Sequence record: LR535910.1
DNA: 64,000 nucleotides
Strand: one strand, 5' to 3'
Part shown: in pieces, positions 11,668 through 34,242 of the stretch
Layout of the letters: every line of letters starts with the position of its first letter
Position numbering within the stretch: position 1 is the first letter of the stretch
Notes under the pieces: model-generated
Databases searched by the model: none
Seen by the model: the letters and a program-made list of their open reading frames with translations, nothing else
What the model was told of the DNA's origin: nothing
Made by a program: the position numbers and the translations under genes

Positions 11668-11677
11668 GAGGGTATAG

Positions 11678-12520: not shown

Positions 12521-12530
12521 GGATTTTGAC

Positions 12531-13376: not shown

Positions 13377-13397
13377 TCCTGAGTAAAGGAAGTAAGA

Positions 13398-14309: not shown

Positions 14310-14322
14310 TTAGGCCTCGCTG

Positions 14323-14362
14323 GGAGGAGGAAATCCTCCTCCTGGCTACTCCTTTCTTTTTT
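14323..14362 (+). terminator. Putative terminator
   Basis: GGAGGAGG-AAAT-CCTCCTCC stem, T tract about 10 nt downstream. Confidence 0.6.
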
Positions 14363-14378
14363 GGCCGAGGAGGCTATT

Positions 14379-15218: not shown

Positions 15219-15228
15219 GAATTAGCGA

Positions 15229-16116: not shown

Positions 16117-16119
16117 TTG

Positions 16120-16947
16120 ATGATCAACTATGCTAAGCCGTCAAACGAGTTGGTCTTTGACCTCATTAACCGGGATAACCCAAACCTACCTATTAAAGCG
16201 TCGCCGGCAAACTGCTACGTGGAGAAAGTGACGCAGGTTCCCGTTAATGCAGCTTCCAACAACCGCAATACGTCGGCACGCTTGCGCGGTATTCAGGGTT
16301 CCGGATTTCGAGACGCAATCACCGTTTACTACGACCGTGTGAACTTAGCGCGGTTATTGCCGTGGGGTCCTTCTGTCCAGGCGCAGTTCGTCACGTTTGA
16401 CGCGCCCAACCTCCACTCAGCCTTTTCGGTGCTCTTGGATACTTACGGAGTAAACTTCTCCGCAATCGATATCCAAAACTACTCACTGTTTGGTGCCAAT
16501 ACCCCAAATTACACCAATACACAGACCATTGCAGCGCTATCGACATCTCCGGCTTATATCGGTTCTGCGACGTTGCGTTATAACCGTGGTTTACCGGTAC
16601 TAGACACTTCGGTGAAATCAGATGTCTTGAATGCGATTCAAGAGCCTATTTCACCGTCTCTCGGTAAGAAGTGTATTGATTTGTTGACGTACGGTATTGA
16701 CTTTACCGCGTATAAAAACCTACTGACAGTAGATGCTTCTGGCCTACCGCAGTGGGCTGGTTTGCGTAAGGTGTTGGATGACCTGGGTATTCCGAACTAC
16801 GCGGGGCCACTGAACAGTAACACCGTTCAGGATGTGCCGACTTCCACCGCTCAGTTCGCTAACAAATCGTACGACCGCGTGGTTATCCAAACGGGCATCG
16901 ATGAGGAAGGCGTGAAAGGCGTGGCGTACTACCACTATAACAGCTAA
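16120..16947 (+). CDS. Virion structural paralogue, class I
   Basis: DLINRDN...RNTSA...VYYDRV; ends GVKGVAYYHYNS. Confidence 0.75.
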   Translation: MINYAKPSNELVFDLINRDNPNLPIKASPANCYVEKVTQVPVNAASNNRNTSARLRGIQGSGFRDAITVYYDRVNLARLLPWGPSVQAQFVTFDAPNLHSAFSVLLDTYGVNFSAIDIQNYSLFGANTPNYTNTQTIAALSTSPAYIGSATLRYNRGLPVLDTSVKSDVLNAIQEPISPSLGKKCIDLLTYGIDFTAYKNLLTVDASGLPQWAGLRKVLDDLGIPNYAGPLNSNTVQDVPTSTAQFANKSYDRVVIQTGIDEEGVKGVAYYHYNS

Positions 16948-16952
16948 GTGTA

Positions 16953-16977
16953 GGGGCTCTTCGGAGCCCCATCTTTT
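16953..16977 (+). terminator. Rho-independent terminator
   Basis: GGGGCTC-TTCG-GAGCCCC followed by ATCTTTT. Confidence 0.75.
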
Positions 16978-16994
16978 GGCGATGCGGAGTCCCT

Positions 16995-18407
16995 ATGCTA
17001 TTTTACTCGAAGGAGTCGGCACTGCTTGTATACGACCAAGTCAATCGGGATAATCCTGATTTAGTTGTTAAGCTGACGCCGGCTATCGCTGCTTTAACCA
17101 GCGGCCCAACTTCAGTTACGTTAAACCAGCGTAACACCAAAGCTGTTTTCACCGGGTATCCAGGGACAGGTGTACAAGGTAATGTTACCGTGTACTACGA
17201 CCGGATTAACCTGGCCACTTTATTTAATTTTGTGCCGACTGTGGCTATCAAAGATACAGTCTTAACGGTACGAGACGCGCTACCTGCAATAAACGACGCA
17301 TTGGGGCTTACATTAGTTGCTTCTGATTTGCAGTCACCTGACGCAAGTTTACCTAAACCGAGCGCTTCGCCGCAGACGTTGAAATTAAATATCTCAGGTA
17401 ATTGCCCTGCGTTTACAGGCAGCTTAACGATACGTTATACCGTCCCGAGTGGTGCAATTTACCCCGATTCTGGACCTGGCCCTAAAACGTTGCTGCAAGG
17501 TAACACTATCGCGGGTTATTTCGGAACAACCACAATTGCAGAGTTGTTTACACACTCTCAACTTCTTAATGCCACTATATCGGCCGGTGCGTTACCACCG
17601 GTACATTCTGGTGCCGAAGGTTGGTACAAGTTCTTTTACCAGGGTAGGGTTATTTACCTCCCGATTAGTCCTGTCGCTAGCTCCATCTCCTGGAATACGT
17701 TATATACAAACGGACTCGTTTACGGAACAGACGATAATGGTAAATACCCTGCGGCGACGCCCGTTAACCAGGGACGCATCATTAGCTTTACAGGCGCAGA
17801 CAACAAAAGGTTTTACTTCCGCGTTCGTCTACCTAGTGCCGGGAAAGACCCATACGTCAGCGGCACCCCAACTGCCGCTGAGTTAGCAGGTAGTGAGTTT
17901 GAGATGTTCAACTTTCTGTATAATGGAACGTGGGACAAACCGATTAACAGTTACTGGACGCTGTTCTGTTTATTGAAAGATACACTGAACACCAACGTCG
18001 CCAATCATCGCATGGCGACGTTGTCTGGAGCCAGTTGGACAAACTTAGGAAAATCATCGAGCGCAGGCAACTACTACTGGTTCCCGGTGCTAGAGTTGGT
18101 GGATAAGTCCACAGTTACCTTGGGTTTAGAAGATATCCATGGTGCGGTAGATTACAGTCTCCAACCGTGCAGCGTGTCCGCAGAAAACACGTTTAGTCTC
18201 AAGCCGTTGGTGCTCGGTAATCCAGATACTACCGATTTCGAACCGGTAGTTGTTACTTCAGAAAACAGTTTCGCACTGCATCCGCCTGCTTTAATGCTGC
18301 CGAAGACAGTCGACTTCCAACCCATTGCGGCTACCGCTGAAATGTATACGCCACCCGACAAGACATCGTTAACGTCACTTAACGGTGAACTGGACGGCTT
18401 TAAGTAG
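16995..18407 (+). CDS. Cassette 1 gene A: anchor domain, shared GPGP..GYFG domain, Pro-rich repeats, terminal NGELDGF
   Basis: Motifs VYYDRINL, SGPGPKTLLQG...GYFG, WYKFF, YWFPVLEL, TSLNGELDGFK. Confidence 0.75.
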   Translation: MLFYSKESALLVYDQVNRDNPDLVVKLTPAIAALTSGPTSVTLNQRNTKAVFTGYPGTGVQGNVTVYYDRINLATLFNFVPTVAIKDTVLTVRDALPAINDALGLTLVASDLQSPDASLPKPSASPQTLKLNISGNCPAFTGSLTIRYTVPSGAIYPDSGPGPKTLLQGNTIAGYFGTTTIAELFTHSQLLNATISAGALPPVHSGAEGWYKFFYQGRVIYLPISPVASSISWNTLYTNGLVYGTDDNGKYPAATPVNQGRIISFTGADNKRFYFRVRLPSAGKDPYVSGTPTAAELAGSEFEMFNFLYNGTWDKPINSYWTLFCLLKDTLNTNVANHRMATLSGASWTNLGKSSSAGNYYWFPVLELVDKSTVTLGLEDIHGAVDYSLQPCSVSAENTFSLKPLVLGNPDTTDFEPVVVTSENSFALHPPALMLPKTVDFQPIAATAEMYTPPDKTSLTSLNGELDGFK

Positions 18408-18418
18408 AGGTATCATCC

Positions 18419-19417
18419 ATGTCTTTTACTTTGCGTTGGAAAAATCCAAACGTAATCTCTACGGTAGTAAAAATCTACCGTGACGTTAAAGATATCACAC
18501 CGAGCGCTTTGCCTGAACCGATTGCAACGCTCTCAAATGGCGAGACAGAATGGCGTGATACCACCGCCGCACCAGGCGCAACCTATTATTACCTTCTGAC
18601 GGTAACCGCCAACGGTAAAACAGTGGCATCGTCTAGCCAGAAATACACCATTGAGATAAAGCGTGGGATTGGCCCAATGACTATTCTAAACGGTAACGAC
18701 CGTTTAGGGTTTATGGGTGCGGTTCCTTACGACGAACAATGGCTTCCGTCGCAAATGCCACCTGCATTTTTGGCGATGTTCCCTAATCTATTAACCGATC
18801 GTGTGGCGTTGTATAAATTTACCCGAAACGGGAAAATCTATTACATGCTATCTAACACGTCGCAGTTCCCGAATACGCCTGTGGACTGGGCTTCCCTCTA
18901 TCAAGCTGGTTTAGTCTACGGTACGGGCGATGCTGGCCCAGAGAACGGCCATGGAGCGCTACCGGCCACTCCACAAGACGCTAAGATAGTCCACAAAGGG
19001 GATACGTACATTATGCGTCTTCCTCGCGGCCTGACGATGTCTAGCGAGCCGCCTGCGTATCCTTTCGTAGCTGACTATAATGGGAAAACCCATGATGAAA
19101 TCGCTTCTCTAACCAACCCGTGTGAGTATAACGATTTGCTTTACACGATGGTTAACGAGGTGCCGTGGAAACAGCGTTGGGCTAACTGGGCAACGAACAG
19201 TTATACTTTTCTGGGGCAGGGTACTTTGGGAACCTCGGCAACGTATTTCGGCGGTGGTGTTCTCTGTATGGAACACGACACCACGGAAGACCGTGTGCTC
19301 CATCGTGGTATTTTTAACAATGCCGGTGGAACACCCGTATCCGCGATTCAGCGTATAAACTATTTATCACCCACCACGAAAGGGCGTTACTACCCTATCT
19401 TTGAACTGGTTGAGTAA
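18419..19417 (+). CDS. Cassette 1 gene B: FnIII-like N-terminal domain plus shared domain
   Basis: MSFTLRWKN...VKIYRD...ATLSNGETEWRD...YYY; paralogous to 21873 and 25229. Confidence 0.75.
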   Translation: MSFTLRWKNPNVISTVVKIYRDVKDITPSALPEPIATLSNGETEWRDTTAAPGATYYYLLTVTANGKTVASSSQKYTIEIKRGIGPMTILNGNDRLGFMGAVPYDEQWLPSQMPPAFLAMFPNLLTDRVALYKFTRNGKIYYMLSNTSQFPNTPVDWASLYQAGLVYGTGDAGPENGHGALPATPQDAKIVHKGDTYIMRLPRGLTMSSEPPAYPFVADYNGKTHDEIASLTNPCEYNDLLYTMVNEVPWKQRWANWATNSYTFLGQGTLGTSATYFGGGVLCMEHDTTEDRVLHRGIFNNAGGTPVSAIQRINYLSPTTKGRYYPIFELVE

Positions 19418-19426
19418 GGGGCAGTC

Positions 19427-20350
19427 ATGACTATACGGTTAAGCTGGCCATCTCAAGCCAGCAAAGGTCTTACCGCGATTGAAATCTATCGCAAGGAAGG
19501 CTGGAACGCAACAATCGACGTTTACAACCCAGGTACACCACACGCGACCTTATCAGGCAGTGCGGTAGAGTTCGTAGACGACATTGATACCCTGACGAAG
19601 AATACGACCTATCGTTATTGGGTGGCTGCTGTAAAAGACAACGAGCGTCTTATTGGCAGCCCGATTACGCAAGGGTTCTATCCAGACACCGGACCGGGTC
19701 CACAAACTATTTTGCGAGGCGATTGGGCTTCGGGTTATTTCGGTACAGTACCGAATACCGAGTTCTTTAATACCGCTGAGCTGAAGCTTATGTTGACCGC
19801 GCAACAGGGTAACATGCTGACCAACGATCCCCAGGAATGGCACAAGTTTATTTTCCATGGGCGAATAGTGTTCTTCCCAGCGACTATGCATTCGAGAAGT
19901 AACTCGGTACAAATGGCGTATCAGTACGGCATGATGTACGGTACCGACGATGACGGGAGCGTAGTCCCGCAGGGCGCGACAGCGACTAAACAAGACTGTA
20001 AGGTTACAAAAGACGGCCGCACGTACCGAATCCGTTTACCCTACGCAGTCCCGTACGACGCGGCTCTCTCGGGACAAGATTACAACAACGGCGAATGGCG
20101 GAACACGATGGGTCGTTTATACCCAATCAGCTCGCAATTCCCACCTATCGGTCTTGGTGCTATTGACTCGCTTACGATACAAGGTTCAACCTCCCAGCCG
20201 AGCGAAACGGGTGCCGCTGCGTTGGCACCGCTGTGGAGCAACAACATATTTGCTTATGCGTACGGTTATGCGCCGGCGGGAATTACTAACACTTCGGGTG
20301 TCGGGATCGCAGCCACGATGTTCTTTGCTTTTGAATTAGTCTTACCGTAA
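19427..20350 (+). CDS. Cassette 1 gene C: FnIII-like N-terminal domain plus shared domain
   Basis: IEIYRK...YRYWVAAVKD...DTGPGPQTILRGDWASGYFG; paralogous to 22865 and 26231. Confidence 0.75.
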   Translation: MTIRLSWPSQASKGLTAIEIYRKEGWNATIDVYNPGTPHATLSGSAVEFVDDIDTLTKNTTYRYWVAAVKDNERLIGSPITQGFYPDTGPGPQTILRGDWASGYFGTVPNTEFFNTAELKLMLTAQQGNMLTNDPQEWHKFIFHGRIVFFPATMHSRSNSVQMAYQYGMMYGTDDDGSVVPQGATATKQDCKVTKDGRTYRIRLPYAVPYDAALSGQDYNNGEWRNTMGRLYPISSQFPPIGLGAIDSLTIQGSTSQPSETGAAALAPLWSNNIFAYAYGYAPAGITNTSGVGIAATMFFAFELVLP

Positions 20351-20363
20351 CGGAGTAAAAGCC

Positions 20364-21860
20364 ATGGGGTTGTATACAGAACCTTCAATGGAACTGCTCT
20401 GCCAACAAATTGTGCGTGACAATCCCAGTTTAGCAGGAAAAATCACCGCCGACTCCATTGGGGTCAGGGGTGTTCCTGTTGCGAAAAACGTTAACGGACG
20501 AAACACACAGATTACGTTGGTAGGTAAACCCGGTAAAGGATTTGCTGGGGAAATAACGGTCTATTACGACCGGTTGAATCTGGCCAGTCTATTTAAGTCT
20601 GGCCCGAAGATGGCGAGTATTCCACGTAGCGCACAAACCCATGCGGAAGCGTTACCGGCGTTCAATGAATTGAACGGGTTGAACTTAACCGCGAGTGATA
20701 TCACCAGTCCAAACGTTGCATTAATGAAATACGCTACGCCGGAAACTGTAACTCTGACGGCGCACGCTAACTCCTTGTGTTATACCGGGTCATGCAAGAT
20801 GACCTATGTTTACGAACCGATTGCGATGTATCCGAAGTCGGGTCCTGGGCCAAAAGGATTAATGGCTGGTAATGAGTTATACGGATTCTTTGGGCTGGTA
20901 AGCGCGGAAGAGTTATTCACATCTGATGAAATGGTGTATGCCCTCTATAACGGCACCACCTGGCCTAACCGCTACGCTATCAAGTGGCTCAAATTCTTTC
21001 TGAATGGGGCGGTAGTGTTTGTTCCGACCCGTGCGATTTGCAACGTTACCTGGGCAGACCTGTACAACAAGGGTGCAATATTTGATTCCGGAGACGCAGG
21101 ACCTCGCCCGAAGTCGACTTACACACCTGTCGATGTTGAACAGTTGAAATACATGGTAAAACGGGATGATGAAGGAACGCATTATTTCAGAATGTCTATC
21201 CCGTATTACACCGAGAACGCCGCCGCGCCTGATTGGAGTAAACCGCCGTCAATCACCTCTATCCTGTCACTGACCAGCAAATTGGGGTCGGTGAACGTAT
21301 ATGGGGAGTGGGGAACTCTTAGCACGACTGATGCTAACTTCCTGGATTACGTGTGGTTACGACACCAGTTCGGTGCCGACCAAGCGTATTACCAGTCTAT
21401 CAGTGCGAGCTATCGTTCAAACACCTACATCTACACCTCTTCTGGCTTTTGGCCAATCCTGGAGATGTTTGATGTTGCCAATGAACCTGTGCCGTTGATT
21501 GACGAAGGTGCAGAATTAACATGGGCACCGTCCGTGGTTACTCTGACGGACATCGACCAAAATGAATCGCTTCGTGTGGTGCCTATTACGGAAACCTCCG
21601 CCGCAGCGAATCCACGTCCGTTAGTTTTCAACACCGACAACACCGAATCTGCCACCCCTGCCTGGCTGCGGGAAGCGTCATCAGACTCACCACGTCCTCT
21701 GCTTGCCGCGACGGACAATGATGAACGTGCATATTCCGTCGCGGTAACAGGCATGGCTAGCGTTAAGATTAGACCGATTATTCTCACGACTGACCAAATC
21801 GCCCAACCTTCAAAAATTACTCTGGGCGATACTAACGGTGAGTTGGATGGATTCCAATAA
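20364..21860 (+). CDS. Cassette 2 gene A
   Basis: MGLYTEPSMELLCQQIVRDNP; SGPGPKGLMAG...GFFG; ends DTNGELDGFQ. Confidence 0.75.
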   Translation: MGLYTEPSMELLCQQIVRDNPSLAGKITADSIGVRGVPVAKNVNGRNTQITLVGKPGKGFAGEITVYYDRLNLASLFKSGPKMASIPRSAQTHAEALPAFNELNGLNLTASDITSPNVALMKYATPETVTLTAHANSLCYTGSCKMTYVYEPIAMYPKSGPGPKGLMAGNELYGFFGLVSAEELFTSDEMVYALYNGTTWPNRYAIKWLKFFLNGAVVFVPTRAICNVTWADLYNKGAIFDSGDAGPRPKSTYTPVDVEQLKYMVKRDDEGTHYFRMSIPYYTENAAAPDWSKPPSITSILSLTSKLGSVNVYGEWGTLSTTDANFLDYVWLRHQFGADQAYYQSISASYRSNTYIYTSSGFWPILEMFDVANEPVPLIDEGAELTWAPSVVTLTDIDQNESLRVVPITETSAAANPRPLVFNTDNTESATPAWLREASSDSPRPLLAATDNDERAYSVAVTGMASVKIRPIILTTDQIAQPSKITLGDTNGELDGFQ

Positions 21861-21872
21861 GAGGTAACGACA

Positions 21873-22862
21873 ATGGCTTTTACAATTCGTTGGACGAACA
21901 ATAACCCTGGGGCTTCGACCGTGAAGCTGTACCGCGACACCAAACCTCTGGTGCGTACGGCATTACCTGAACCTCTGGCAACGTTCACTAACGGGGAAAC
22001 TGAGTATACTGACCGAACAGCGATACTGGGGACAACGTATTACTACATGACCACCGTGACAGTGGGAAGTCGGACACTGTTCAGTCCGCAGAAATCAATT
22101 CTAATTCAGAACCGTCGCGGTATCGGCATCGTGGCTCCACAGTACGGTGATGACCGCTTTGCGTATTACGGGTACGTGGCGTACGGTGAATTACCTAGCG
22201 CGGGTGATTATCCGCCAGGGTTTGTGGCCCTTTCTGGATACGACCCAACTGTTAAGCCGGGCTTGATGAAGTTCCAGCTAGACGGTAAAATTCTGTATCT
22301 GTTTAGTGGTCTTCGTGTGAACGGCAACACGCTGTATAGCCGTGATGCGATTTATAACGCGGGTTTGCTGTACGGTGTGGCGGGACCTGGTCCGGAAGGC
22401 GGTCATGGCGATTTACCTGACGTTGACCAGGCTGGGGAGTTTACGTGGTTGGGTGACCGCTATCGGATGCGCCTGCTGCGCGGTTTAACACTCGACAGTG
22501 AAAGCCCGGTCATGACACTCGATGCACAGTGGGACGGTAAACTCCATGACGCGTCACCGTATACTGCCGATAGCGAATACAACCGACTCATCTATGGGAT
22601 AAGTAGCTGGTTCCCAGAAAAGAAAAAAGTGATGTCCCTGATAAAGTGGTCGAACTCCAGCATATTCGGAAATGGATCGCTGGTGGCAGGCCGTGGGGCG
22701 CATTGTCAGGAGTTTGACCCAGAACGTAAGTTGGGGCTGACGCGCGGATGGGCGGCGGCGGATTCCACTGATACCGTGGATAACCTCCAGCGTATACAAC
22801 ATGTCCCTGGTGCGACCGTGGGCGGTATTTGGATTCCAGTAATCGAGCTTATCGAGGATTAA
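21873..22862 (+). CDS. Cassette 2 gene B
   Basis: MAFTIRWTN...KLYRD...NGETEYTD; YRMRLLRGLT; ends IPVIELIED. Confidence 0.75.
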   Translation: MAFTIRWTNNNPGASTVKLYRDTKPLVRTALPEPLATFTNGETEYTDRTAILGTTYYYMTTVTVGSRTLFSPQKSILIQNRRGIGIVAPQYGDDRFAYYGYVAYGELPSAGDYPPGFVALSGYDPTVKPGLMKFQLDGKILYLFSGLRVNGNTLYSRDAIYNAGLLYGVAGPGPEGGHGDLPDVDQAGEFTWLGDRYRMRLLRGLTLDSESPVMTLDAQWDGKLHDASPYTADSEYNRLIYGISSWFPEKKKVMSLIKWSNSSIFGNGSLVAGRGAHCQEFDPERKLGLTRGWAAADSTDTVDNLQRIQHVPGATVGGIWIPVIELIED

Positions 22863-22864
22863 TC

Positions 22865-23764
22865 ATGCCTATTACATTACACTTTGCACAACGGAAGCCA
22901 CAGGCGCTCGATAGCATCGAAATCTATCGCAAGACGCCGGGCAACGCCACCATTGATGTTAATGCACCGGGAACGCCTCTGGCAACCCTTCCGGGTGACG
23001 CTACATCGTACGAAGACAACGCTGTGGAAAACAACACCACTTACCGTTATTGGATAGCTGCGGTTAAAGACGGTGAGCGTGTCTTCAACACCCCTACCGC
23101 CCAAGGGTTCTTTTTAGACACCGGGCCTGGCCCCCAGAAACTGTTATACGGCGACTGGCACGCTGGATACTTTGGAACAGTAACGCCAGCAGAGTTATTC
23201 ACTAACACGGAACTGAACGGCCTCGTGGTGAATATGTTCAGTTCCGCCGTTGGTGCCTGGCATAAATTCATTTACAAAAACCGTATTCTGTTTATGTCCG
23301 ATAACTCGATAATAAACGCTAGCCCGCAGTTCATTTATAACCAGGGGATGATGTACGGCCAGGATGGCAATGGATATGTACCGGGCTGGGCTACTGCACG
23401 TAACCAACGGCGCACGGTGACGAAAAACGGTTACGAATACGTGGTGCGCTTGCCGTATTTGTTCGACTACAAATTCTGGACGTCTTACGTTGGAAGCGGT
23501 AACACTGAGTTGTATCTCGACGGTGAGTGGTTTAACACCTTCGCGCGCCTGTACAACTACAGTGGGCAGTTTCCGCGCTTTGACGACATTCCGGTCGGTC
23601 CAATCGATTCGGTTACTGCCCAACAATCTGCATTCTTTGCGGCTATGAATAACACGTCCAGTCAGTGGTACAACCTTCCACCTTACCCTGAGTCGCCGTC
23701 GTGGAGTAACTACGGTACCACTACAATACGCTCCATTGCGGTACTTGAACTCGTTCTGCCTTAA
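22865..23764 (+). CDS. Cassette 2 gene C (start reassigned to ATG 22865)
   Basis: GAGGA RBS; IEIYRK...YRYWIAAVKD...DTGPGPQKLLYGDWHAGYFG; ends VLELVLP. Confidence 0.75.
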   Translation: MPITLHFAQRKPQALDSIEIYRKTPGNATIDVNAPGTPLATLPGDATSYEDNAVENNTTYRYWIAAVKDGERVFNTPTAQGFFLDTGPGPQKLLYGDWHAGYFGTVTPAELFTNTELNGLVVNMFSSAVGAWHKFIYKNRILFMSDNSIINASPQFIYNQGMMYGQDGNGYVPGWATARNQRRTVTKNGYEYVVRLPYLFDYKFWTSYVGSGNTELYLDGEWFNTFARLYNYSGQFPRFDDIPVGPIDSVTAQQSAFFAAMNNTSSQWYNLPPYPESPSWSNYGTTTIRSIAVLELVLP

Positions 23765-23775
23765 CAGGAGACTTC

Positions 23776-25218
23776 ATGGGATTGTATAGCGCACCCGAAC
23801 TGGAATTACTCTGCCAACAAGTCGTAAGGGATAACCCTGAACTCGCAGGAAGAATCAGCGCTGATTCGATTGGGGTGAGGGGTATTCCTGCCGAGACCAC
23901 TAAGAATGGTCGTAACACGGTAATTACGTTGGTAGGAAAACCCGGTAAAGGTTTCTCTGGGGAGTGCACGGTTTATTACGACCGTTTAACATTATCAGAT
24001 CTATTTAAAATAGCTCCGCGCGTCTACGTACCACAAACGGCCAAGACCGTGCGGGATCTTCTCCCAGCTCTACGCGATTTATACGGTGTTTGGTTATCTG
24101 ATAGCAGTGTACAGTCGGTAGACGCGCCTATCAAATCGCTGGCAACGCCAACACGTATTAATTTAACCGCGTATAATAGCGTATGCTATCGCGGCTATAT
24201 CCCGGTCGATTATTTGAATGAAGCCGTGGGCTACTATCCAGATTCTGGGCCAGGCAATAAATATTTGTTGGCAGGGGACAGCACAAACGGATACTTCGGC
24301 CACGTTTCTCAGCAAGAGTTATTTACCTTTGCTGAACTAAACAACCTAATTCGTCCTGATGTTGCCCCAACGAAAATGACTTTCGAGTGGTTGAAATTTT
24401 TCAAGGACGGTAAGATTGTTTATCTACCGACTACCGGAACGTTAACAGCAACCTGGACGGCCCTTTATCAAGCGGGTGCCATTTTCGGTACAGGAGGCGC
24501 TGGTCCGTATCCAGACGGTATCGAACCTGTTGACCAGGCTTTGATTGTCACGAAAACTGAGAATAACAAGACGCATTATTACCGTGTCTCCGTTCCGGTT
24601 AGCCCTGATTTATCAAAGGCCACGCCGTTGTGGCTTATTTCACAACTCGGTGACGGTTCTACGGGTGGCGACTGGGCAAATGACACCACGTTAACCAGAA
24701 CCACCGTCTTCTTCACGCAACAACTGTTAACCGGGGGTAACCCTGTTAAAGTACAACGTTGCAATATGCGTGGTGGCTCAGTTGAATGGGTAACCCTTAC
24801 AGATACCACTTACTGGTGGCCTGTTTTAGAGGAAATCAATAAGGACGACATCGTCTTACCTTTAGCTGATGTGGAAGGGGATGTTGTGTGGCGCGTTAGG
24901 GTTATTCCTAATGTACCATCACCACAACCTGATAGCATTCGCCCTCTTGCAGTCGAGGTTGCGACAACAGATGCGCCGAGACCTCTAGCAACAACTGCGG
25001 AACAGGTGGAAGAACCTATCAGCCCGATTGTGGTGGGTGAACCAAACGTCGATACTGCGCTGCCGTTATCGACAGTGTCGAACAGCGTAGGTACAGTTAG
25101 GCCGATGGTTGTACTTGAACCACACGTCGACGCACCGCGTCCACTACCGCCTACTCAGGCAGAACCTCCACTTAAAACAGATTTAGCAACCGCGAACGGT
25201 GAGTTGAACGGCTTCTAA
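23776..25218 (+). CDS. Cassette 3 gene A
   Basis: MGLYSAPELELLCQQVVRDNP; SGPGNKYLLAG...GYFG; ends TANGELNGF. Confidence 0.75.
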   Translation: MGLYSAPELELLCQQVVRDNPELAGRISADSIGVRGIPAETTKNGRNTVITLVGKPGKGFSGECTVYYDRLTLSDLFKIAPRVYVPQTAKTVRDLLPALRDLYGVWLSDSSVQSVDAPIKSLATPTRINLTAYNSVCYRGYIPVDYLNEAVGYYPDSGPGNKYLLAGDSTNGYFGHVSQQELFTFAELNNLIRPDVAPTKMTFEWLKFFKDGKIVYLPTTGTLTATWTALYQAGAIFGTGGAGPYPDGIEPVDQALIVTKTENNKTHYYRVSVPVSPDLSKATPLWLISQLGDGSTGGDWANDTTLTRTTVFFTQQLLTGGNPVKVQRCNMRGGSVEWVTLTDTTYWWPVLEEINKDDIVLPLADVEGDVVWRVRVIPNVPSPQPDSIRPLAVEVATTDAPRPLATTAEQVEEPISPIVVGEPNVDTALPLSTVSNSVGTVRPMVVLEPHVDAPRPLPPTQAEPPLKTDLATANGELNGF

Positions 25219-25228
25219 GGAGTAACAG

Positions 25229-26227
25229 ATGGCTTTCACACTACGCTGGAAAAATGAAAATCCGGCAGGTTCAATTGTTAACATTTATCGGGGCACGGCT
25301 AAAATAAATACAGCCGCATTACCAGCCCCTATTGCAACTTTAAGTAATGGCGAAACGGAATGGACGGACGAAACCGTTATTCTTAACACCCGTTACTGGT
25401 ATCTTTTAACAGTAACTGTTAACGGTCGTACCGTAGGTAGTCCACAAAAATCCATTGTCATTAAAAACCGTCGTGGTGTGGGTGGCGTCGACCAGATTAA
25501 CTATTCCGATACTGACGACTTGGCGTTTCTGGGGCAGTTGCCGTTCGAAGAACAGATGACCTATGACGCGTTGCCTGCAGGCTTTCGTGCATTAACAGGG
25601 ATGTCGGGCACGGGCACGCTAATCATGAACAAGTTTTATCGTCATGGTAAAGTTTACTACATGATGAACAGCGGCGGACGATTTAACTCTACACTTTACT
25701 CGTGGAATGACATTTATAACGCGGGGCTTGTGTACGGTGTTGATGGATTTGGTCCTGATAACGGACGTGGTGATTTGGCTGGTGTTGACCAGAGTGGGTT
25801 GTTTGAATGGCAAGGCGACACCTATCGGATGCGATTGCTGCGCGGTTTAACCGACGGGGACGAACCGACAGTAATGACGTTGGATGAATCGTTGCGAAAC
25901 GCAGACCATGATGACTTGGAATATGGTCGCTGCGAATATAACGATTTTGTTTATCCGTTCGGAGATTGTATCCCTAACAAACAAATGCTCCCTAACTGGA
26001 CTAATATCAGTCCAGCGTCCATTTATGGGAGCGGTAGCGCTTACCAAGGCAAAGGTTTCTTGTGCCAAGAACGTGATCCTGAATCGGGATTAGTTCTGGT
26101 TCGTGGGTCTGCGCCTACCGATTCAAGTATAACCAATACGTCGAAACGTAACCTCTCCCAAGTTACGTTAATTGACAGTGCTGAGAAGGTCGGTTTGTAC
26201 GCATTCGTTATCGAGTTAGTGGAGTAA
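25229..26227 (+). CDS. Cassette 3 gene B
   Basis: MAFTLRWKN...NIYRG...NGETEWTD; YRMRLLRGLT; ends FVIELVE. Confidence 0.75.
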   Translation: MAFTLRWKNENPAGSIVNIYRGTAKINTAALPAPIATLSNGETEWTDETVILNTRYWYLLTVTVNGRTVGSPQKSIVIKNRRGVGGVDQINYSDTDDLAFLGQLPFEEQMTYDALPAGFRALTGMSGTGTLIMNKFYRHGKVYYMMNSGGRFNSTLYSWNDIYNAGLVYGVDGFGPDNGRGDLAGVDQSGLFEWQGDTYRMRLLRGLTDGDEPTVMTLDESLRNADHDDLEYGRCEYNDFVYPFGDCIPNKQMLPNWTNISPASIYGSGSAYQGKGFLCQERDPESGLVLVRGSAPTDSSITNTSKRNLSQVTLIDSAEKVGLYAFVIELVE

Positions 26228-26230
26228 AAC

Positions 26231-27133
26231 ATGTCGATTATCTTAAACTGGAAACAACAGCCAGGCCAGACTTTAGATTCCATTGAAATCTATCGTTACG
26301 ACAACCCTAGACAAAGTGTTAACCCAGTAGCACCGGGGGAACCTATTGTAACACTACCAGGTAACACAACGACGTACGAGGACAAGACCACCGAAGCGTA
26401 TAAAACGTATCAATATCGCATCGTGGCGGTAAAGGGCACTGAAAAGGTTATGGGGCTGCCGATTGTACAGGGCGACTTTCCAATGACAGGACCCGGCCCA
26501 CAGGAACTTATTCGTGGCGACTGGCATCGTGGCTACTTTGGCACACTGACAAACGAAGAATTTATTCTTAACCATGCCGAGCTGAATGGTTTAATTGGCT
26601 TTAATGCCTGGAACCAAGCTCCAACATTGTTCCATAAATTCGTTTTCAAAGGACGCATTCTGTTCATTCCTGACACGGTGACCCGTTTAGGGACGACGTG
26701 GAACGAACAATACCAGCAAGGTCTGGCCTGGGGAACAGATGACTACGGTTTCCCGCCACGGAGCGTCTCTACCACTAACCAGCGTCGGACATTTAATAAA
26801 GACGGTTACGAGTATGTGGTACGTTTGCCTCGACTCGGAGACTACAGTTATGGGCACAGCACCTACCTAAGCAGCGGTGGTTATTTTCAAGACGGCGAGT
26901 GGCACAACACGTTCGCAAGCTTGTTCCGCTACGCGGGCGTCGTAAGACGTTTTGGCGACTTACCGACGCGCTCCGGCGGTAGTCCAACCGATTCAAGCGC
27001 AACATTGTTTGCCAACGGTTATGACAACGCCACCCCCTGGTACTATCGCAGCAACTCACCAGACTCACCATCGTACACCTCTTCGACCAATAGCGCGTCG
27101 GTAGTCCACGTTATCGAACTGGTTCTTAGCTAA
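26231..27133 (+). CDS. Cassette 3 gene C
   Basis: IEIYRY...YQYRIVAVKG...TGPGPQELIRGDWHRGYFG; ends VIELVLS. Confidence 0.75.
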   Translation: MSIILNWKQQPGQTLDSIEIYRYDNPRQSVNPVAPGEPIVTLPGNTTTYEDKTTEAYKTYQYRIVAVKGTEKVMGLPIVQGDFPMTGPGPQELIRGDWHRGYFGTLTNEEFILNHAELNGLIGFNAWNQAPTLFHKFVFKGRILFIPDTVTRLGTTWNEQYQQGLAWGTDDYGFPPRSVSTTNQRRTFNKDGYEYVVRLPRLGDYSYGHSTYLSSGGYFQDGEWHNTFASLFRYAGVVRRFGDLPTRSGGSPTDSSATLFANGYDNATPWYYRSNSPDSPSYTSSTNSASVVHVIELVLS

Positions 27134-27144
27134 CAGGAGCTAAT

Positions 27145-27267
27145 ATGGGGTTTTACTCATCCACTGCACTTGAGCTGTTGTGTCGGCTCATTCAGCGGGA
27201 TAATCCCCAACACGCAGGTCGAATCAGCTGGAGTTAAAGGGATAGCGTACTTCACCATAACAGCTAA
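27145..27267 (+). pseudogene. Internally deleted relic of an anchor-family gene
   Basis: AGGAG RBS; MGFYSSTALELLCRLIQRDNPQHAGRIS matches the starts of the 20364 and 23776 genes; in shifted frames GVKGIAYF and HNS-stop match the end of 16120-16947 (GVKGVAYYHYNS-stop). Confidence 0.75.
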
Positions 27268-27300
27268 AAATAGGCCCCGAAGGGCCTATTTTCTTTTTTT
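27267..27300 (+). terminator. Rho-independent terminator
   Basis: AAAATAGGCCC-CGAA-GGGCCTATTTT followed by CTTTTTTT. Confidence 0.85.
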
Positions 27301-27311
27301 AGGACGTTGCA

Positions 27312-28631
27312 ATGATCAACTATAACAAACCTGTCATGCAGCTGGTTTGGGATCAGATTAATCGTGATAACCCGCAGCTCAAGAAACCACTCAACGCAAC
27401 CAACGTGGCGTTATTACAAGGTCCTTTAACCAATGCCTTGCGCGATGGCCGCAACAGCCGTATAGTGGTAAACGGATTACAGGGTGGTGGTTACAGCGGT
27501 AAGATGGACATCTACTACGACCGCTTAAACCTTTCGCAGTATTTTAAAGGCGTCAGCGTACCGGTTAAAGTACCTTATCGGGCGACGTCCTACCGCGACA
27601 TCATCGACCGGATTTCCGCAGCTTGTGGGTTGGTGCTTACTGCTGACGATTTAACGTATCCCGACAGCCAGTTTGCAATGATCACTGTGGCAACGGGCGA
27701 TCGGACGGTGGCGATTAAATCGGATAACCCCGCATTCACGGGTCACATTCCTATTAGCTTTATTCGTGAAGAGCCCAGCTTTGCCGACTTGTACCACACC
27801 ACCGAAACCGGAGCTTGGGAACCCATGGATGTTTACAGCACGGTCTATCGACTCGACTGGAGCATGTACACCCAACAGATAATCAATATCCCGATGGGTA
27901 CCCCGCTGCGACTAAACAGTAACTCGTACATGACCCAGTTCATCGCGGCGCTGTCGGCATGGTCGGGCATCCCGTTCACTATCGGTAATGCTGCTACTGA
28001 TAACCCGTATGACCTCTATGGGTATGTCGCTACACGCAATAACAACCCAGGCTTAGACCCTGATATGCGTGGGGAGTACAATTACTGCGTGAAGTTGACG
28101 CCACCTGAGGATATGGGTAATCTCCGTCGTCCGTTCTTCTTGCACTTTGGTCCGAAAAATAACGTGGCCTATTTGGCGCAGGAAAAGGACGTCGAACGTT
28201 ATGCGCGTTACATGAGGTTCCGGGAAACCAGCTCAAATTCGATGAGCGTCACGTTGTATCAAAACGAGTACGTGTTGACTCGGGCGGAAGCGCCTGAAAC
28301 AATGGATGATTTAACGGGTTCCCCGTATGGCACTCGATACTGTACCGGGAGTATTCGACGGCTGATGCAACACGCGTTTCCGACCGAAGAGATGTTCCAA
28401 GAAAGTATTGCTAACCGGCGTCGGGTACTGTACCACACTGCTTACACCACCACGTCATCGGCTATTACTTACCAGGGACTATACCGTAACGGATACCAAT
28501 CCAAACAAATGACGAGCCTCTACTCGAATTACTGTAACTATTTCATCTATTACGACCCAAGCAAAGGCGGCTATATGGTCTACAGTCCATATAGCAAAAC
28601 CGCCCCGGTCCCTTGGTATCCACCGCTATAG
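27312..28631 (+). CDS. Virion structural protein: anchor domain plus unrelated Tyr-rich C-terminal region
   Basis: DQINRDNP...RNSRI...GYSGKMDIYYDRLNL N-terminus; unique C-terminal half. Confidence 0.7.
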   Translation: MINYNKPVMQLVWDQINRDNPQLKKPLNATNVALLQGPLTNALRDGRNSRIVVNGLQGGGYSGKMDIYYDRLNLSQYFKGVSVPVKVPYRATSYRDIIDRISAACGLVLTADDLTYPDSQFAMITVATGDRTVAIKSDNPAFTGHIPISFIREEPSFADLYHTTETGAWEPMDVYSTVYRLDWSMYTQQIINIPMGTPLRLNSNSYMTQFIAALSAWSGIPFTIGNAATDNPYDLYGYVATRNNNPGLDPDMRGEYNYCVKLTPPEDMGNLRRPFFLHFGPKNNVAYLAQEKDVERYARYMRFRETSSNSMSVTLYQNEYVLTRAEAPETMDDLTGSPYGTRYCTGSIRRLMQHAFPTEEMFQESIANRRRVLYHTAYTTTSSAITYQGLYRNGYQSKQMTSLYSNYCNYFIYYDPSKGGYMVYSPYSKTAPVPWYPPL

Positions 28632-28645: not shown

Positions 28646-30823
28646 ATGTCCTACACTCCTGATTTAGTGGCGACCGTGATTCGGTCGCTCAACCGTAAAA
28701 ACGCGGTCGCCAAAGCAGTAGACCCCGCTAACGTACGCCTGGTGTCCGTGGCGCATCGTGACGAAAAAACCCTAGACGTCACACTGACAGGGGGTCCGGG
28801 GTATTCGAATTACGGTCAAATTACGGCCCAGGTCACGAAACAAAATATTGCTGATTATTTCGCTAAGGTTAAGTTGGATGCCATTCCCACTTGTGCATCC
28901 ATTCACGAACTGTTGCCGCATTTAGACACTTTACTGGGGATTACCTTTTTAACCGACGACTTTGAAGACCTGCCTATCACTTGGACAAACAATGCTGCGC
29001 GCATCACGTTCCAGGCGAAACAGACAAGTCTTGTCTGGTACGGCAGCCAAACGCTAGATGTGATAAACGGCGACGTGGATATCAACACCGTCTACACTGT
29101 TACCAATATCATTCTCACGCTAAAGGCTGCGAATAAACAGCAGTGGATTAACTTCTACTCTAATGCAGTCAAACGGATCGTGGATCTTGATAAAGTCGAT
29201 GTCAGCGCCCCGATGTCCCCGGAGGATATAGGCCAAACCTCTGCGTATAACAGCGTCGTGGCTTTGACCGCTAGACCGGGGAGCGGGATGTTTGGAACGA
29301 AGTATGTGTTCTTTTCACGTAACAAACTCGAGACATATGCAGGCAAAACCACATACGTCCCGGATGATTTCACCGGTAGCCTGCACGATGCTCTGGCCAT
29401 CGAGACACTCGGCATTCGGAGTGTATTTGATGTAAACGAAATTGCTCCTGTAGAGAACTTGGCAGGCGAGTGGCCAAGACAAGTGCAATTGGCACCCGTG
29501 GAGGGTTCGTACAAAGTCATGGGCAGTGCCACGTTGAATGTGGCACGCTATCAAGATAACGAGCAAACCCTTAACCTGAACTACACAACTACGTCGCAAG
29601 TTTCGGACAGCTACTGGGCCACGACGTTGACCAACCATGCGGCGTGCGGGCGTTTGTTTGTTAACGTGACCGTAGATGCGGGGGCTTTCGTTTATCGCGA
29701 CAGCAACCTGAAACCGACGTTCGTTATCGACGAATTGCCGCAAATTGGCGAGGTGGTTTGGAACTTCGTTAACCGGGGAACCATTCTTGGTCGCGGTGGT
29801 TCGGGTATGGTCTATTCTCTGCCTGCGAACACATCAGCAGACGGAGCTGACGCAATCCACATTACCGATACCTTCCGCGGCAAAGTCACCATCGAAAACT
29901 ACGGCACCATCGCCGGAGGTGGGGGTGGGGGCGACTACTATGCGTTTAGCACCACCAAGATCGGTGGAGCTGGTGGTGCGCCTCTCGGGCCAGGCGCGGC
30001 GGTACCCAGCGGCACCAATAACCGTAACGGCTTAGCTGGGTCCCGTGACAAAGGCGGTGCTACCCAGTTAGTCGTCGCACAATTTACCGGCTACCAGAGT
30101 CGCTACTATGGCGGTCCTGGTGGCGATTGGGGCCAGCCGGGACGATATACAGCGTTCGAGCAATGGAACACCCCGGCTACCGGCTCGCCGGTCTATGTCT
30201 ACGGTCGTGAAGACGGGATGTCATGGACTCGCCCTGGGATGGCAGGCGAAGCCGTCGGTGGGAATAAAAGTATCGTCAACTGGGTATCCGTCGGAACGGT
30301 GAAACCGAATGTCACCGACGAGTACCAAGAGTTCCTCGACTACCTCGCAGATTTAGATGCCAACCGATTGGCCAGTGCGGATGGGATAGATAAAGTCACC
30401 GACCCAACCAAACCTGTAGTTGTGGAGTTCTTAGGTACGATTATTTCAGGTACGCTGTTCAAAAAGCAAAACATACCCGGCGGTTTGGTGGGAACACCAT
30501 ACGGCGATGCTGTAGCCAACTTACCAGCCACCACATTGTTTGGTATCATGGCACACTGTGTATCGGAGTTTGATATTGTGCACGACACTTGGCGTTACAA
30601 CCGCGCGGTAATGTTCACCCTAAAACCTGCGCCTACCGGAGTGATTGGCCTCGCTGTGGAACGCAACCGGGTGAAATCGGCTACCAGTAGTGCACCGGTG
30701 GAGAGGTTCTATGTCGATCGCTTCGTGTATTACGATGCGTATCTCGGTAAAATGATGGAATGTAATCCGTATACCAAATCTGCCCCTAAACCGTGGGTGC
30801 GGCCAACGATACCGTTATCGTAA
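28646..30823 (+). CDS. Putative receptor-binding protein: two anchor-like domains plus a gp38-like polyglycine adhesin domain
   Basis: FVNRGTILGRGG...GADAI...IENYGTIAGGGGGG...GGAGGAPLG...GGPGGDWGQPG...AGEAV.G...W..VG follows the glycine-rich motif order of T2/S16 gp38. Confidence 0.65.
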   Translation: MSYTPDLVATVIRSLNRKNAVAKAVDPANVRLVSVAHRDEKTLDVTLTGGPGYSNYGQITAQVTKQNIADYFAKVKLDAIPTCASIHELLPHLDTLLGITFLTDDFEDLPITWTNNAARITFQAKQTSLVWYGSQTLDVINGDVDINTVYTVTNIILTLKAANKQQWINFYSNAVKRIVDLDKVDVSAPMSPEDIGQTSAYNSVVALTARPGSGMFGTKYVFFSRNKLETYAGKTTYVPDDFTGSLHDALAIETLGIRSVFDVNEIAPVENLAGEWPRQVQLAPVEGSYKVMGSATLNVARYQDNEQTLNLNYTTTSQVSDSYWATTLTNHAACGRLFVNVTVDAGAFVYRDSNLKPTFVIDELPQIGEVVWNFVNRGTILGRGGSGMVYSLPANTSADGADAIHITDTFRGKVTIENYGTIAGGGGGGDYYAFSTTKIGGAGGAPLGPGAAVPSGTNNRNGLAGSRDKGGATQLVVAQFTGYQSRYYGGPGGDWGQPGRYTAFEQWNTPATGSPVYVYGREDGMSWTRPGMAGEAVGGNKSIVNWVSVGTVKPNVTDEYQEFLDYLADLDANRLASADGIDKVTDPTKPVVVEFLGTIISGTLFKKQNIPGGLVGTPYGDAVANLPATTLFGIMAHCVSEFDIVHDTWRYNRAVMFTLKPAPTGVIGLAVERNRVKSATSSAPVERFYVDRFVYYDAYLGKMMECNPYTKSAPKPWVRPTIPLS

Positions 30824-30869
30824 TTTAACGAGGAACTTGACGGGTTTAAAGCCTGAAGATAACCCATGC

Positions 30870-30901
30870 CCTCTTCCCCACGGGGAAGAGGCTTTCTTTT
30901 T
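30870..30901 (+). terminator. Rho-independent terminator
   Basis: CCTCTTCCCC-AC-GGGGAAGAGG followed by CTTTCTTTTT. Confidence 0.75.
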
Positions 30902-30928
30902 ATGACCCTATCAACTCAGGAGGTTATC

Positions 30929-33714: not shown

Positions 33715-34242
33715 ATGGCAGTCATCTCTGCAAAAGACCAACTCGTTGCGCTGTTTAATGCTGCAAACAGCGGACTGTCTAGTCCGTTAACTTCTGCTGA
33801 CGTTACATTCGGCGCTGTTGCTGACTATTCACCAGCAGATTCTGGAGACACTCGCAACTCCAAACTCACCATCACTGCCACCGCGGAATCCGCTAACTTT
33901 ACTGGCGAGAAAGAGCTGCATTATACCCGCCTCGATTCATCGAACATCATCGGTGCGAAAGCAGTTACCGCTGACCAGGCAGAATGGGATACCGATGAAG
34001 AAGTGCTTGCTTTTGTCAACGCAGATCTAATTGCCGCCGGTAAAACGGAAGATGCGTTTGCATTGTCTGAACTCACCATTTCACGCGAGGACGGCGACAG
34101 TGGTGAGAAAATCATCACTGTTATGGTGAAAGAAGGCCACATTAAATACCAACCTGCCAGCCTTGCAGTTTATACTGTAACGCAGCCAATCGTTAAAACT
34201 GACCTGAGCACCACCAACGGTGAACTGGACGGATTCGTTTAA
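33715..34242 (+). CDS. Stand-alone anchor-domain virion protein ending TDLSTTNGELDGFV
   Basis: LFNAAN...TRNSKL...HYTRLD pattern and the same C-terminal motif as the cassette A genes; AAGGA RBS; own terminator. Confidence 0.75.
   Translation: MAVISAKDQLVALFNAANSGLSSPLTSADVTFGAVADYSPADSGDTRNSKLTITATAESANFTGEKELHYTRLDSSNIIGAKAVTADQAEWDTDEEVLAFVNADLIAAGKTEDAFALSELTISREDGDSGEKIITVMVKEGHIKYQPASLAVYTVTQPIVKTDLSTTNGELDGFV

What the first reader, a model, noticed from the sequence alone, without database searches (positions are those of the whole stretch)
29745..30310. T-even gp38-like polyglycine adhesin domain inside a jumbo phage anchor protein
Seen: ordered glycine-rich motifs (NRGTILGRGG, GADAI, NYGTIAGGGGGG, GGAGGAPLG, GGPGGDWGQPG, AGEAV.G...W..VG) with variable loops between. 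Established: T2/T6/S16 gp38 uses such motifs to build a polyglycine type II sandwich whose loops select outer-membrane porin receptors. Here the domain is internal, preceded by two anchor-like domains and followed by about 170 more residues. Inference: a captured adhesin, a strong candidate for secondary receptor recognition.
Basis: partly seen in the sequence, partly recalled or inferred. Interest (0 to 1): 0.7.

Follow-up and report, generated by a model that had tools for sequence, protein, structure and literature searches.

The report
gp38-type adhesin module in DUF7941 protein
A giant Salmonella phage (SPN3US group) encodes a 725-residue virion protein in which a receptor-binding module of the kind that T-even phages carry at their tail-fibre tips sits between two filament-building domains and an unknown end domain, which makes it a likely host-binding subunit of the phage's poorly understood filament system.

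Summary
ORF 28646-30823 (+, 725 aa) contains every quoted glycine motif at aa 376-499. Residues 373-553 match Pfam GP38 (66 bits, cut-off 25). An AlphaFold2 model (pLDDT 86.5) matches the solved gp38 adhesins of phages PP01 and S16 (Foldseek E 3e-10 and 6e-8).

The window is a Seoulvirus, identical to several Salmonella SPFM phages. The protein is the ortholog of SPN3US gp155.

Its domains are two DUF7941 N-type domains, the first related to phiKZ baseplate protein gp127, then a gp38 beta-helix plus polyglycine module, then a 170-aa domain with no known relative. The gp37-attachment domain of true gp38 is absent.

The fusion is old. It occurs in Cronobacter phage CR5, Erwinia phage Phobos and about fifteen metagenomic lineages, and all domains diverge together.

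A 2026 Goslar study proposes that DUF7941 proteins form host-recognition filaments, so this is probably an adhesin-bearing subunit of those filaments. Three things weaken that reading:
- Published mass spectrometry finds gp155 on tailless heads.
- The reported SPN3US receptor is the flagellum.
- The loops barely vary among Seoulviruses isolated on Salmonella, E. coli and Proteus.

Function is untested. I rate it a new variant of known kinds, of moderate interest.

The parts
28646..30823 (+). Intact gene, 725 aa. Ortholog of SPN3US gp155 (SPN3US_0155), 78 kDa virion protein.
   Evidence: ORF list and translation. DNA is 100% identical to SPFM4 and others and 96.7% to SPN3US. Protein is 97.5% identical to SPN3US. 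Annotation. Virion mass spectrometry in PMC10052503 Table S2.
28646..29155 (+). Domain 1 (aa 1-170): DUF7941 N-type globular domain, the filament or anchor module.
   Evidence: Pfam PF25613, 82 bits against cut-off 27. Foldseek hit to 9xqd_0, which is PHIKZ127, at E 6.7e-5. The profile of the window's DUF7941 N-domains hits PHIKZ127 at E 9.5e-6.
29171..29557 (+). Domain 2 (aa 176-304): second, diverged copy of the DUF7941 N-type domain.
   Evidence: Pfam reports 2 stretches. An HMM built from N-domains only hits aa 176-304 at i-E 6.3e-7. Relatives also show two DUF7941 stretches.
29558..29761 (+). Neck (aa 305-372): beta-strand region. From about aa 323 it aligns with the beta-helix part of gp38.
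   Evidence: hhalign aligns aa 323-521 with residues 75-283 of gp38-type P0037. In relatives, Pfam GP38 matches start at profile position 2-4. Model strands lie at aa 334-381.
29762..30304 (+). gp38-type polyglycine module (aa 373-553). Five conserved glycine blocks (aa 373-387, 418-429, 441-448, 487-499, 530-534) alternate with four variable segments (aa 388-417, 430-440, 449-486, 500-529).
   Evidence: Pfam GP38. Foldseek to 9v85_C with TMt 0.70 and to 6f45_D with TMt 0.61. Conservation and length statistics.
30314..30820 (+). C-terminal domain (aa 557-725) of unknown function, shared with the upstream gene's product.
   Evidence: phrog_6409. BLASTP to the C-terminus of ORF 27312-28631 at 2e-7. 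Confident domain model, pLDDT 88 and pTM 0.84, with no PDB match at E<=0.001; the best is the LCCL domain 1jbi at E 0.016. No similarity to the C-terminal half of the short DUF7941 paralogs.
10870..28631 (+). Tandem array of 17 same-strand genes, the orthologs of SPN3US gp138-gp154 (paralog family B). Eleven carry Pfam DUF7941. The finding's gene is the last member of the array.
   Evidence: Pfam. PHROGs. SPN3US annotation. Paralog family B in PMC5694885.
27312..28631 (+). gp154 ortholog (439 aa): DUF7941 N-domain plus the same C-terminal domain, but no gp38 module. It is the closest 'uninserted' paralog.
33715..34242 (+). gp160 ortholog (175 aa), DUF7941 N-domain only. In SPN3US it is a high-abundance virion protein (>300 copies).
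   Evidence: Pfam. HMM. Abundance in PMC5694885.
1317..1868 (+). Outlying DUF7941-type paralog (183 aa).
   Evidence: HMM of N-domains at E 4.4e-20; this ORF was not in the profile. phrog_2935.

Best explanation
The gene encodes a virion-external subunit of the DUF7941 filament system of chimalliviruses that displays a gp38-type receptor-binding module. The two N-terminal DUF7941 domains tie the protein to other DUF7941 paralogs or to their anchoring site. In the Goslar model this happens by the head-to-tail beta-sheet docking proposed for that family. The gp38 beta-helix and polyglycine sandwich replace the part that in T-even phages sits on the gp37 fibre tip, and they present four variable segments to the outside. 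Those segments bind a component of the enterobacterial surface and add reversible, multivalent attachment (about 40 copies per virion) to the phage's known dependence on flagella. Shown here: domain identities, predicted fold, conservation pattern and phylogenetic spread. Shown by others: presence in the virion. Inferred: exposure on the outside, incorporation into filaments, ligand binding and the nature of the ligand. Where the filaments are anchored, on head or neck versus peripheral baseplate, is unresolved.
For: The gp38 homology rests on three independent methods. Glycine blocks are length-invariant and 68-90% conserved, while the segments between them are 26-41% conserved and vary in length (3-17, 10-15, 32-38 and 20-30 residues) across 12 same-architecture proteins; this is the gp38 GRM/HVS logic described in PMC12032242. 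The N-domain is homologous to phiKZ gp127, which is modelled on the outer peripheral baseplate. In the Goslar study, DUF7941 protein gp22 forms filaments in negative-stain EM, and three DUF7941 proteins carry carbohydrate-binding, glycoside-hydrolase or LRR domains (PMC13742148); a gp38 module fits that pattern. The SPN3US ortholog is a virion protein, and from published PSM numbers I estimate roughly 44 copies per virion. The architecture is conserved in CR5, Phobos and the metagenomic lineages. One relative carries two such genes, and longer relatives add further domains, including Laminin_G_3.
Against: SPN3US gp155 and all family B proteins stay with CsCl-purified tailless heads, whereas the baseplate and fibre proteins gp168-170 are lost (PMC10052503 and PMC5694885). 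The authors tentatively considered some family B members to be ejection proteins. The reported SPN3US receptor is the flagellum (PMC11428620), not an outer-membrane protein. Within Seoulvirus the polyglycine module differs by only 1-3 residues among six of the seven isolates compared, including the Proteus isolate, with more synonymous than non-synonymous changes, so the loops do not track host at this depth; the E. coli isolate Lh1B is the exception, with clustered differences. No binding data exist. Oligomer prediction was not possible.
Confidence: 0.6

Rival explanations
1. The protein is an internal head protein, packaged with the DNA and possibly ejected into the cell. The gp38-like module would then act inside the particle or inside the host, not in adsorption.
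For: It is assigned to the head in two independent tailless-mutant data sets. Family B members are labelled 'Head ejection?' in PMC5694885 Table 1. No DUF7941 density is reported on Goslar capsid or baseplate maps.
Against: [quoted passage not shown] The homolog phiKZ gp127 is an external baseplate component. DUF7941 paralogs elsewhere carry carbohydrate-binding, hydrolase and LRR domains. A gp38-type adhesin has no known intracapsid role. Relative to the major capsid protein, gp155 is the most depleted of the array's products in tailless heads, at about 0.64.
Confidence: 0.15
2. The polyglycine sandwich is kept as a rigid structural or spacer module of the filament and no longer binds a receptor.
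For: The loops are nearly invariant across Seoulviruses isolated on three host genera, under purifying selection. The module is internal, with a further domain after it, which could be the real ligand-binding end; that domain has a weak LCCL-like fold match at E 0.016.
Against: Across the wider family the inter-block segments are the most variable and most length-polymorphic parts of the protein. That pattern is typical of exposed recognition loops and is not expected for a pure spacer.
Confidence: 0.15
3. It is an ordinary T-even-like gp38, a small adhesin capping a gp37-type long tail fibre, as the automatic name in one GenBank record implies.
For: The SPFM19 record names it 'Phage tail fiber adhesin Gp38'. 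It has a Pfam GP38 hit.
Against: There is no Gp38_N attachment domain, and homology starts only at gp38 residue 75. The protein is 725 aa with DUF7941 domains in front and 170 residues after the module. It is not next to a gp37-like gene. It co-purifies with heads.
Confidence: 0.03

Closest known systems
Gp38 adhesins of Straboviridae (S16, T2, T6, PP01; PDB 6f45 chain D, 9v85)
   Same: The beta-helix plus three-layer polyglycine sandwich module. Five conserved glycine blocks with four variable segments. Pfam PF05268. Predicted fold match with TMt 0.61-0.70.
   Different: The N-terminal gp37-attachment domain (PF21721) is absent. The module is internal to a 725-aa protein. The scaffold is DUF7941 rather than a trimeric long tail fibre. 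A 170-aa domain follows it. The virion location is reported as head. The ligand is unknown.
Goslar DUF7941 proteins with appended host-recognition domains (gp86, gp92, gp161; PMC13742148)
   Same: An N-terminal DUF7941 module followed by a putative host-recognition domain, in a chimallivirus with many DUF7941 paralogs.
   Different: Those proteins carry carbohydrate-binding, glycoside-hydrolase or LRR domains. A gp38-type module is not mentioned in that paper (0 text hits). Here the DUF7941 N-domain is duplicated.
phiKZ gp127 (PDB 9xqd chain 0)
   Same: A homologous N-terminal DUF7941 domain (Foldseek E 6.7e-5; profile E 9.5e-6).
   Different: gp127 is 290 aa and has no adhesin module. One copy sits on each baseplate star lobe, whereas the SPN3US ortholog of this protein is found on tailless heads.
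SPN3US gp155 (SPN3US_0155)
   Same: It is the ortholog, with 97.5% protein identity and the same position in the array.
   Different: It is published only as a 78.3-kDa head protein without function and was not listed in paralog family B. No paper that I could search describes its gp38 module.
GP38-domain-containing longer tail-fibre proteins of other phages (phrog_11439; BFVD hits such as a 756-aa tail fibre protein and the Rhizobium phage RL2RES Gp38-domain protein)
   Same: They show that the gp38 module is a shuffled domain found outside small T-even adhesins.
   Different: In those proteins the module is terminal on conventional fibre proteins, not nested in a DUF7941 protein.

Membership tests
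T-even/S16-type Gp38 adhesin | Pfam GP38 (PF05268) above the gathering score | tested here: met
   66.2 bits against cut-off 25, E 4.8e-18, aa 373-553.
T-even/S16-type Gp38 adhesin | Beta-helix plus polyglycine type II sandwich fold | tested here: met
   Predicted only. AlphaFold2 pLDDT is 90-97 over the glycine blocks. Foldseek gives probability 1.00 to 9v85_C (TMt 0.70) and 6f45_D (TMt 0.61). Backbone angles were not measured.
T-even/S16-type Gp38 adhesin | Five conserved glycine-rich motifs separated by four variable segments | tested here: met
   Five length-invariant blocks and four variable, length-polymorphic segments in 12 same-architecture proteins.
T-even/S16-type Gp38 adhesin | N-terminal attachment domain that binds the gp37 fibre tip (Gp38_N, PF21721) | tested here: not met
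   No PF21721 hit in this protein, although 2 true gp38s in alignment A2 have it. Homology begins at gp38 residue 75.
T-even/S16-type Gp38 adhesin | Small stand-alone protein (about 250-310 aa) that ends with the specificity module | tested here: not met
   725 aa, with 372 residues before the module and about 170 after it.
T-even/S16-type Gp38 adhesin | Monomer at the long-tail-fibre tip that binds outer-membrane proteins through its loops | not testable with these tools
   Literature places the SPN3US ortholog on tailless heads. No binding data exist.
DUF7941 proteins of chimalliviruses (SPN3US paralog family B) | Pfam DUF7941 (PF25613) above the gathering score | tested here: met
   82.1 bits against cut-off 27, in 2 stretches. 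The second copy is confirmed independently.
DUF7941 proteins of chimalliviruses (SPN3US paralog family B) | N-terminal globular domain of the phiKZ gp127 type | tested here: met
   Foldseek hit to 9xqd_0 at E 6.7e-5. Profile hit to PHIKZ127 at E 9.5e-6.
DUF7941 proteins of chimalliviruses (SPN3US paralog family B) | Encoded among multiple paralogs in a nucleus-forming jumbo phage and present in the virion | tested here: met
   It is the last gene of a 17-gene array. The virion mass spectrometry and the Chimalliviridae/nucleus status of SPN3US come from the literature.
DUF7941 proteins of chimalliviruses (SPN3US paralog family B) | Head-to-tail oligomerisation into filaments | not testable with these tools
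   Only single-chain prediction was available. This protein lacks the C-terminal half of the Pfam model, and its own C-terminal domain is unrelated to it.
DUF7941 proteins of chimalliviruses (SPN3US paralog family B) | Association with the peripheral baseplate, as proposed for the family | not testable with these tools
   The literature conflicts: baseplate in phiKZ and by proposal in Goslar, but tailless heads in SPN3US.

The most novel reading that the evidence does not exclude
In flagellum-dependent Seoulviruses the DUF7941 filaments, including this gp38-bearing subunit, are anchored on the head or neck rather than the baseplate. A polyglycine adhesin would then work from the capsid end of the particle as part of a head-borne capture system, comparable in logic to the head filaments of other flagellotropic phages (the latter from my own knowledge, not checked here). 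That would reconcile the SPN3US tailless-head proteomics with the filament model.
Probability: 0.25. Interest if true: 0.7.

Novelty: new variant of a known kind. Interest (0 to 1): 0.5.

Why it matters
It extends the rare polyglycine-sandwich adhesin beyond T-even tail-fibre tips into a different scaffold, the DUF7941 paralogs that make up a large and unexplained share of chimallivirus virions. A gp38-type module is hard to explain inside a capsid. Its presence in a family B-type protein therefore bears directly on an open disagreement in the literature: are these abundant proteins internal head or ejection proteins (SPN3US proteomics), or external host-recognition filaments (the Goslar and phiKZ structures)? 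It also gives a concrete, structurally defined candidate for host-surface contact in SPN3US-like phages, which are being developed against Salmonella and whose adsorption apparatus is largely unannotated.

Tried and rejected
- phmmer of a short DUF7941 paralog against PDB found nothing. A profile of the window's N-domains was needed to reach phiKZ gp127.
- I tested whether the C-terminal domain (aa 557-725) is the DUF7941 C-terminal half, which would preserve both filament interfaces. hhalign gave 0.2% probability, so this was rejected.
- A separate AlphaFold2 model of the C-terminal domain was confident, but Foldseek against PDB gave no hit at E<=0.001. There is only a weak LCCL-like lead.
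- tblastn with the module alone found only Seoulviruses, probably because the low-complexity filter masks it. The full-length query added CR5 and Phobos.
I did this within Seoulvirus and it was uninformative, because the module is almost invariant.
- Recent horizontal capture was rejected, because the domains diverge in parallel and GC3 is equal.
- Literature searches for a description of the module in SPN3US-like phages found nothing. In SPN3US papers 'gp38' means an unrelated SPN3US gene product.
- The SPN3US genome announcement (PMC3233126) is not held, so the flagellar receptor rests on a later paper from the same laboratory.
- I recall that CR5 is also flagellum-dependent, but I could not verify this, so it is not used as evidence.
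- Transparency note: my script printed hhalign's own output, which includes a 23-column consensus line. I did not use it.

Full report
**1. What is there**

The finding lies inside one intact ORF, window 28646-30823 (+), 725 aa. All five quoted motifs occur in its frame at aa 376-385, 400-404, 418-429, 440-448 and 489-499. The given bounds correspond to aa 367-555. Glycine is 21.7% of aa 373-556 against 5.7% elsewhere in the protein.

**2. Source**

The gene is 100% identical at the DNA level to Salmonella phages SPFM2, 3, 4, 11, 13, 16, 17, 19, 21 and 22, and 96.7% identical to SPN3US, genus Seoulvirus.
- It is the ortholog of SPN3US_0155 (gp155), with 97.5% protein identity.
- SPN3US is classed in Chimalliviridae and forms a phage nucleus.
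- One SPFM record already carries the automatic name 'Phage tail fiber adhesin Gp38'. All the other listed records say 'hypothetical protein'.

**3. Identity of the glycine-rich region**

Several independent methods agree that this is a gp38-type module.
- Pfam GP38 (PF05268) matches aa 373-553 at E 4.8e-18, 66.2 bits against a cut-off of 25. PHROG 2056 'tail fiber protein; host specificity' matches aa 370-553.
- phmmer against PDB finds the S16 and PP01 gp38 chains weakly, at E 0.004.
- A search of 1.84 billion representative proteins returns only 33 hits. Among them is P0037, a bona fide gp38 with Gp38_N plus GP38 domains.
- A profile of six orthologs aligns with P0037 at 98.7% probability and E 1.6e-16. 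Query aa 323-521 align with gp38 residues 75-283.
- An AlphaFold2 model built on 22 sequences has mean pLDDT 86.5. The glycine blocks score 90-97 and are assigned neither helix nor strand.
- Foldseek matches that model to PP01 gp38 (9v85_C, E 2.7e-10, TMt 0.70) and S16 gp38 (6f45_D, E 5.9e-8, TMt 0.61).

Caveat: I could not read the model's coordinates, so polyglycine-II geometry rests on these superpositions, not on measured angles.

**4. Anatomy of the whole protein**

- aa 1-170: a DUF7941 N-type domain (Pfam 82 bits against cut-off 27).
- aa 176-304: a second, diverged copy of that domain (i-E 6.3e-7 with a profile that did not contain it). Relatives show the same duplication.
- aa 305-372: a beta-strand neck that merges into the gp38 beta-helix.
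- aa 373-553: the polyglycine module.
- aa 557-725: a compact domain shared with the product of the upstream gene (phrog_6409; BLASTP 2e-7). It is unrelated to the C-terminal half of the short DUF7941 paralogs. It has no significant PDB match; the best is an LCCL domain at E 0.016.

The N-domain is homologous to phiKZ gp127 (Foldseek E 6.7e-5, profile E 9.5e-6). One copy of gp127 sits on each star lobe of the phiKZ outer peripheral baseplate.

**5. Genomic context**

The gene closes a same-strand array of 17 genes (10870-28631), which correspond to SPN3US gp138-154, 'paralog family B'.
- Eleven of these genes carry Pfam DUF7941. The others belong to linked PHROG families.
- Further DUF7941 paralogs lie at 33715-34242 and 1317-1868.
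- Downstream lie a GH108 plus PG_binding_3 gene, a DUF1353 gene and an endolysin-like gene.
- On the opposite strand lie the large family C baseplate and fibre candidates.

**6. Conservation**

Across 12 same-architecture proteins at 27-100% identity, the five glycine blocks never vary in length and are 68-90% conserved. The four segments between them are 26-41% conserved and vary in length (alignment). This is the GRM/HVS organisation that defines gp38 (PMC12032242).

The whole architecture recurs in several places:
- Cronobacter phage CR5 (40% identity) and Erwinia phage Phobos (39%).
- About fifteen metagenomic 50%-identity clusters.
- A 237-kb metagenomic jumbo-phage contig that carries two such genes in its array.
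- Relatives of 755-1537 aa that add further domains, one of them Laminin_G_3.

The module's identity to relatives falls in step with the other domains, and its GC3 equals that of the rest of the gene. The fusion is therefore old and vertically inherited, not a recent capture.

Within Seoulvirus the module differs by 1-3 residues in six of the seven phages compared, which include isolates from Salmonella and Proteus, and synonymous changes outnumber non-synonymous ones. The E. coli isolate Lh1B is the exception, with clustered non-synonymous differences.

**7. What the literature adds**

- Location in SPN3US. Mass spectrometry identifies gp155 (78.3 kDa) as a virion protein that remains on purified tailless heads. 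Family B behaves the same way, whereas gp168-170 are lost.
- Copy number. From the published PSM counts I estimate about 44 copies per virion and about 28 per tailless head. Relative to the major capsid protein that is a ratio of 0.64, the lowest in the array but far above true tail proteins.
- Processing. The protein is not among the prohead-protease substrates.
- The Goslar cryo-EM study (November 2026) shows that a DUF7941 protein forms filaments. It notes DUF7941 proteins with carbohydrate-binding, hydrolase or LRR domains, and it proposes a baseplate-anchored 'fiber cloud' for first host contact. It mentions neither SPN3US nor a gp38 module.
- Receptor. SPN3US is reported to use flagella as its receptor.
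- Prior description. I found no paper describing the gp38 module in this protein.

**8. Interpretation**

The best-supported reading is an adhesin-bearing subunit of the DUF7941 filament system. The DUF7941 domains replace gp38's fibre-attachment domain as the anchor. The polyglycine module presents variable loops to a host-surface ligand. Confidence is 0.6.

The main uncertainty is location. The tailless-head data argue for head or neck association, or for an internal position. The phiKZ structure argues for the baseplate.

The module itself is an argument against an internal role. The rivals are an internal or ejected protein (0.15), a structural spacer that no longer binds anything (0.15), and an ordinary T-even gp38 (0.03, refuted by the architecture).

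**9. Classification**

The region works like a gp38 specificity module and meets three defining features: the HMM, the predicted fold and the block/loop organisation. It fails two: it has no Gp38_N attachment domain, and it is not a small stand-alone protein. It should not be filed as a gp38 ortholog.

It is a member of the DUF7941 family by HMM, fold and context. Filament formation and anchoring could not be tested.

Verdict: a new variant of known kinds, of moderate interest. Its chief value is as evidence in the unresolved question of what the abundant DUF7941 / family B proteins do.

**10. Slip check**

My script printed hhalign's own output, including a short consensus line, which I did not use.

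Noticed in passing
window 10870-28631 (+), plus 33715-34242 and 1317-1868: There is an unusually large tandem family: at least 14 DUF7941-bearing genes in the window, interleaved with six phrog_1062-type genes. PHROG 3589 (512 aa) spans both kinds of domain, so the two gene types look like parts of one longer ancestral architecture.
   Followed up: partly
literature on SPN3US gp138-155, compared with phiKZ gp127 and the Goslar DUF7941 proteins: Published evidence conflicts. SPN3US proteomics keeps these proteins on tailless heads, while the phiKZ structure and the Goslar model place the family on the peripheral baseplate. The Goslar paper does not cite the SPN3US data.
   Followed up: partly
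L009 10001-12121 and 13474-15681: A 237-kb metagenomic jumbo-phage contig with the same gene order carries two DUF7941+GP38 genes (706 and 735 aa), separated by a gp154-like gene. This suggests the adhesin-bearing subunit has been duplicated.
   Followed up: no
window 30314-30820 (aa 557-725): The C-terminal domain gives a confident model with no significant PDB relative. The best match is a weak resemblance to the LCCL domain (1jbi, E 0.016, TMt 0.65). A disordered stretch at aa 597-610 precedes the folded core.
   Followed up: partly
window 30866-31519, 31808-32449, 32459-32974: Directly downstream lie a GH108 plus PG_binding_3 muramidase-like gene, a DUF1353 gene (a PHROG labelled 'tail assembly chaperone') and a second endolysin-like gene (phrog_894). 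In SPN3US the first two products are non-virion.
   Followed up: no
window 35500-37771 (-): A pair of adjacent radical SAM genes lies between the structural array and the large baseplate and fibre genes. The pair is conserved in CR5.
   Followed up: no
window 34324-34995 (-): This ORF has a DUF4376 domain (38.8 bits against cut-off 25). The same family flanks the array in the metagenomic relative L009.
   Followed up: no
GenBank SPFM records (hits H11-H24) and protein P0004: About eleven SPFM records match the gene only as 36-37 short pieces, which points to poor sequence quality in those deposits. A 96%-identical truncated copy (P0004, 446 aa) is labelled Escherichia coli but lies on a 241-kb contig, most likely a phage genome within a bacterial assembly.
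   Followed up: no
L003 (Escherichia phage vB_EcoM_Lh1B ortholog): Unlike the other Seoulviruses, this ortholog has tight clusters of non-synonymous differences in the neck and around the end of the module, and a slightly earlier stop. I did not determine whether this is real variation or sequencing error.
   Followed up: no
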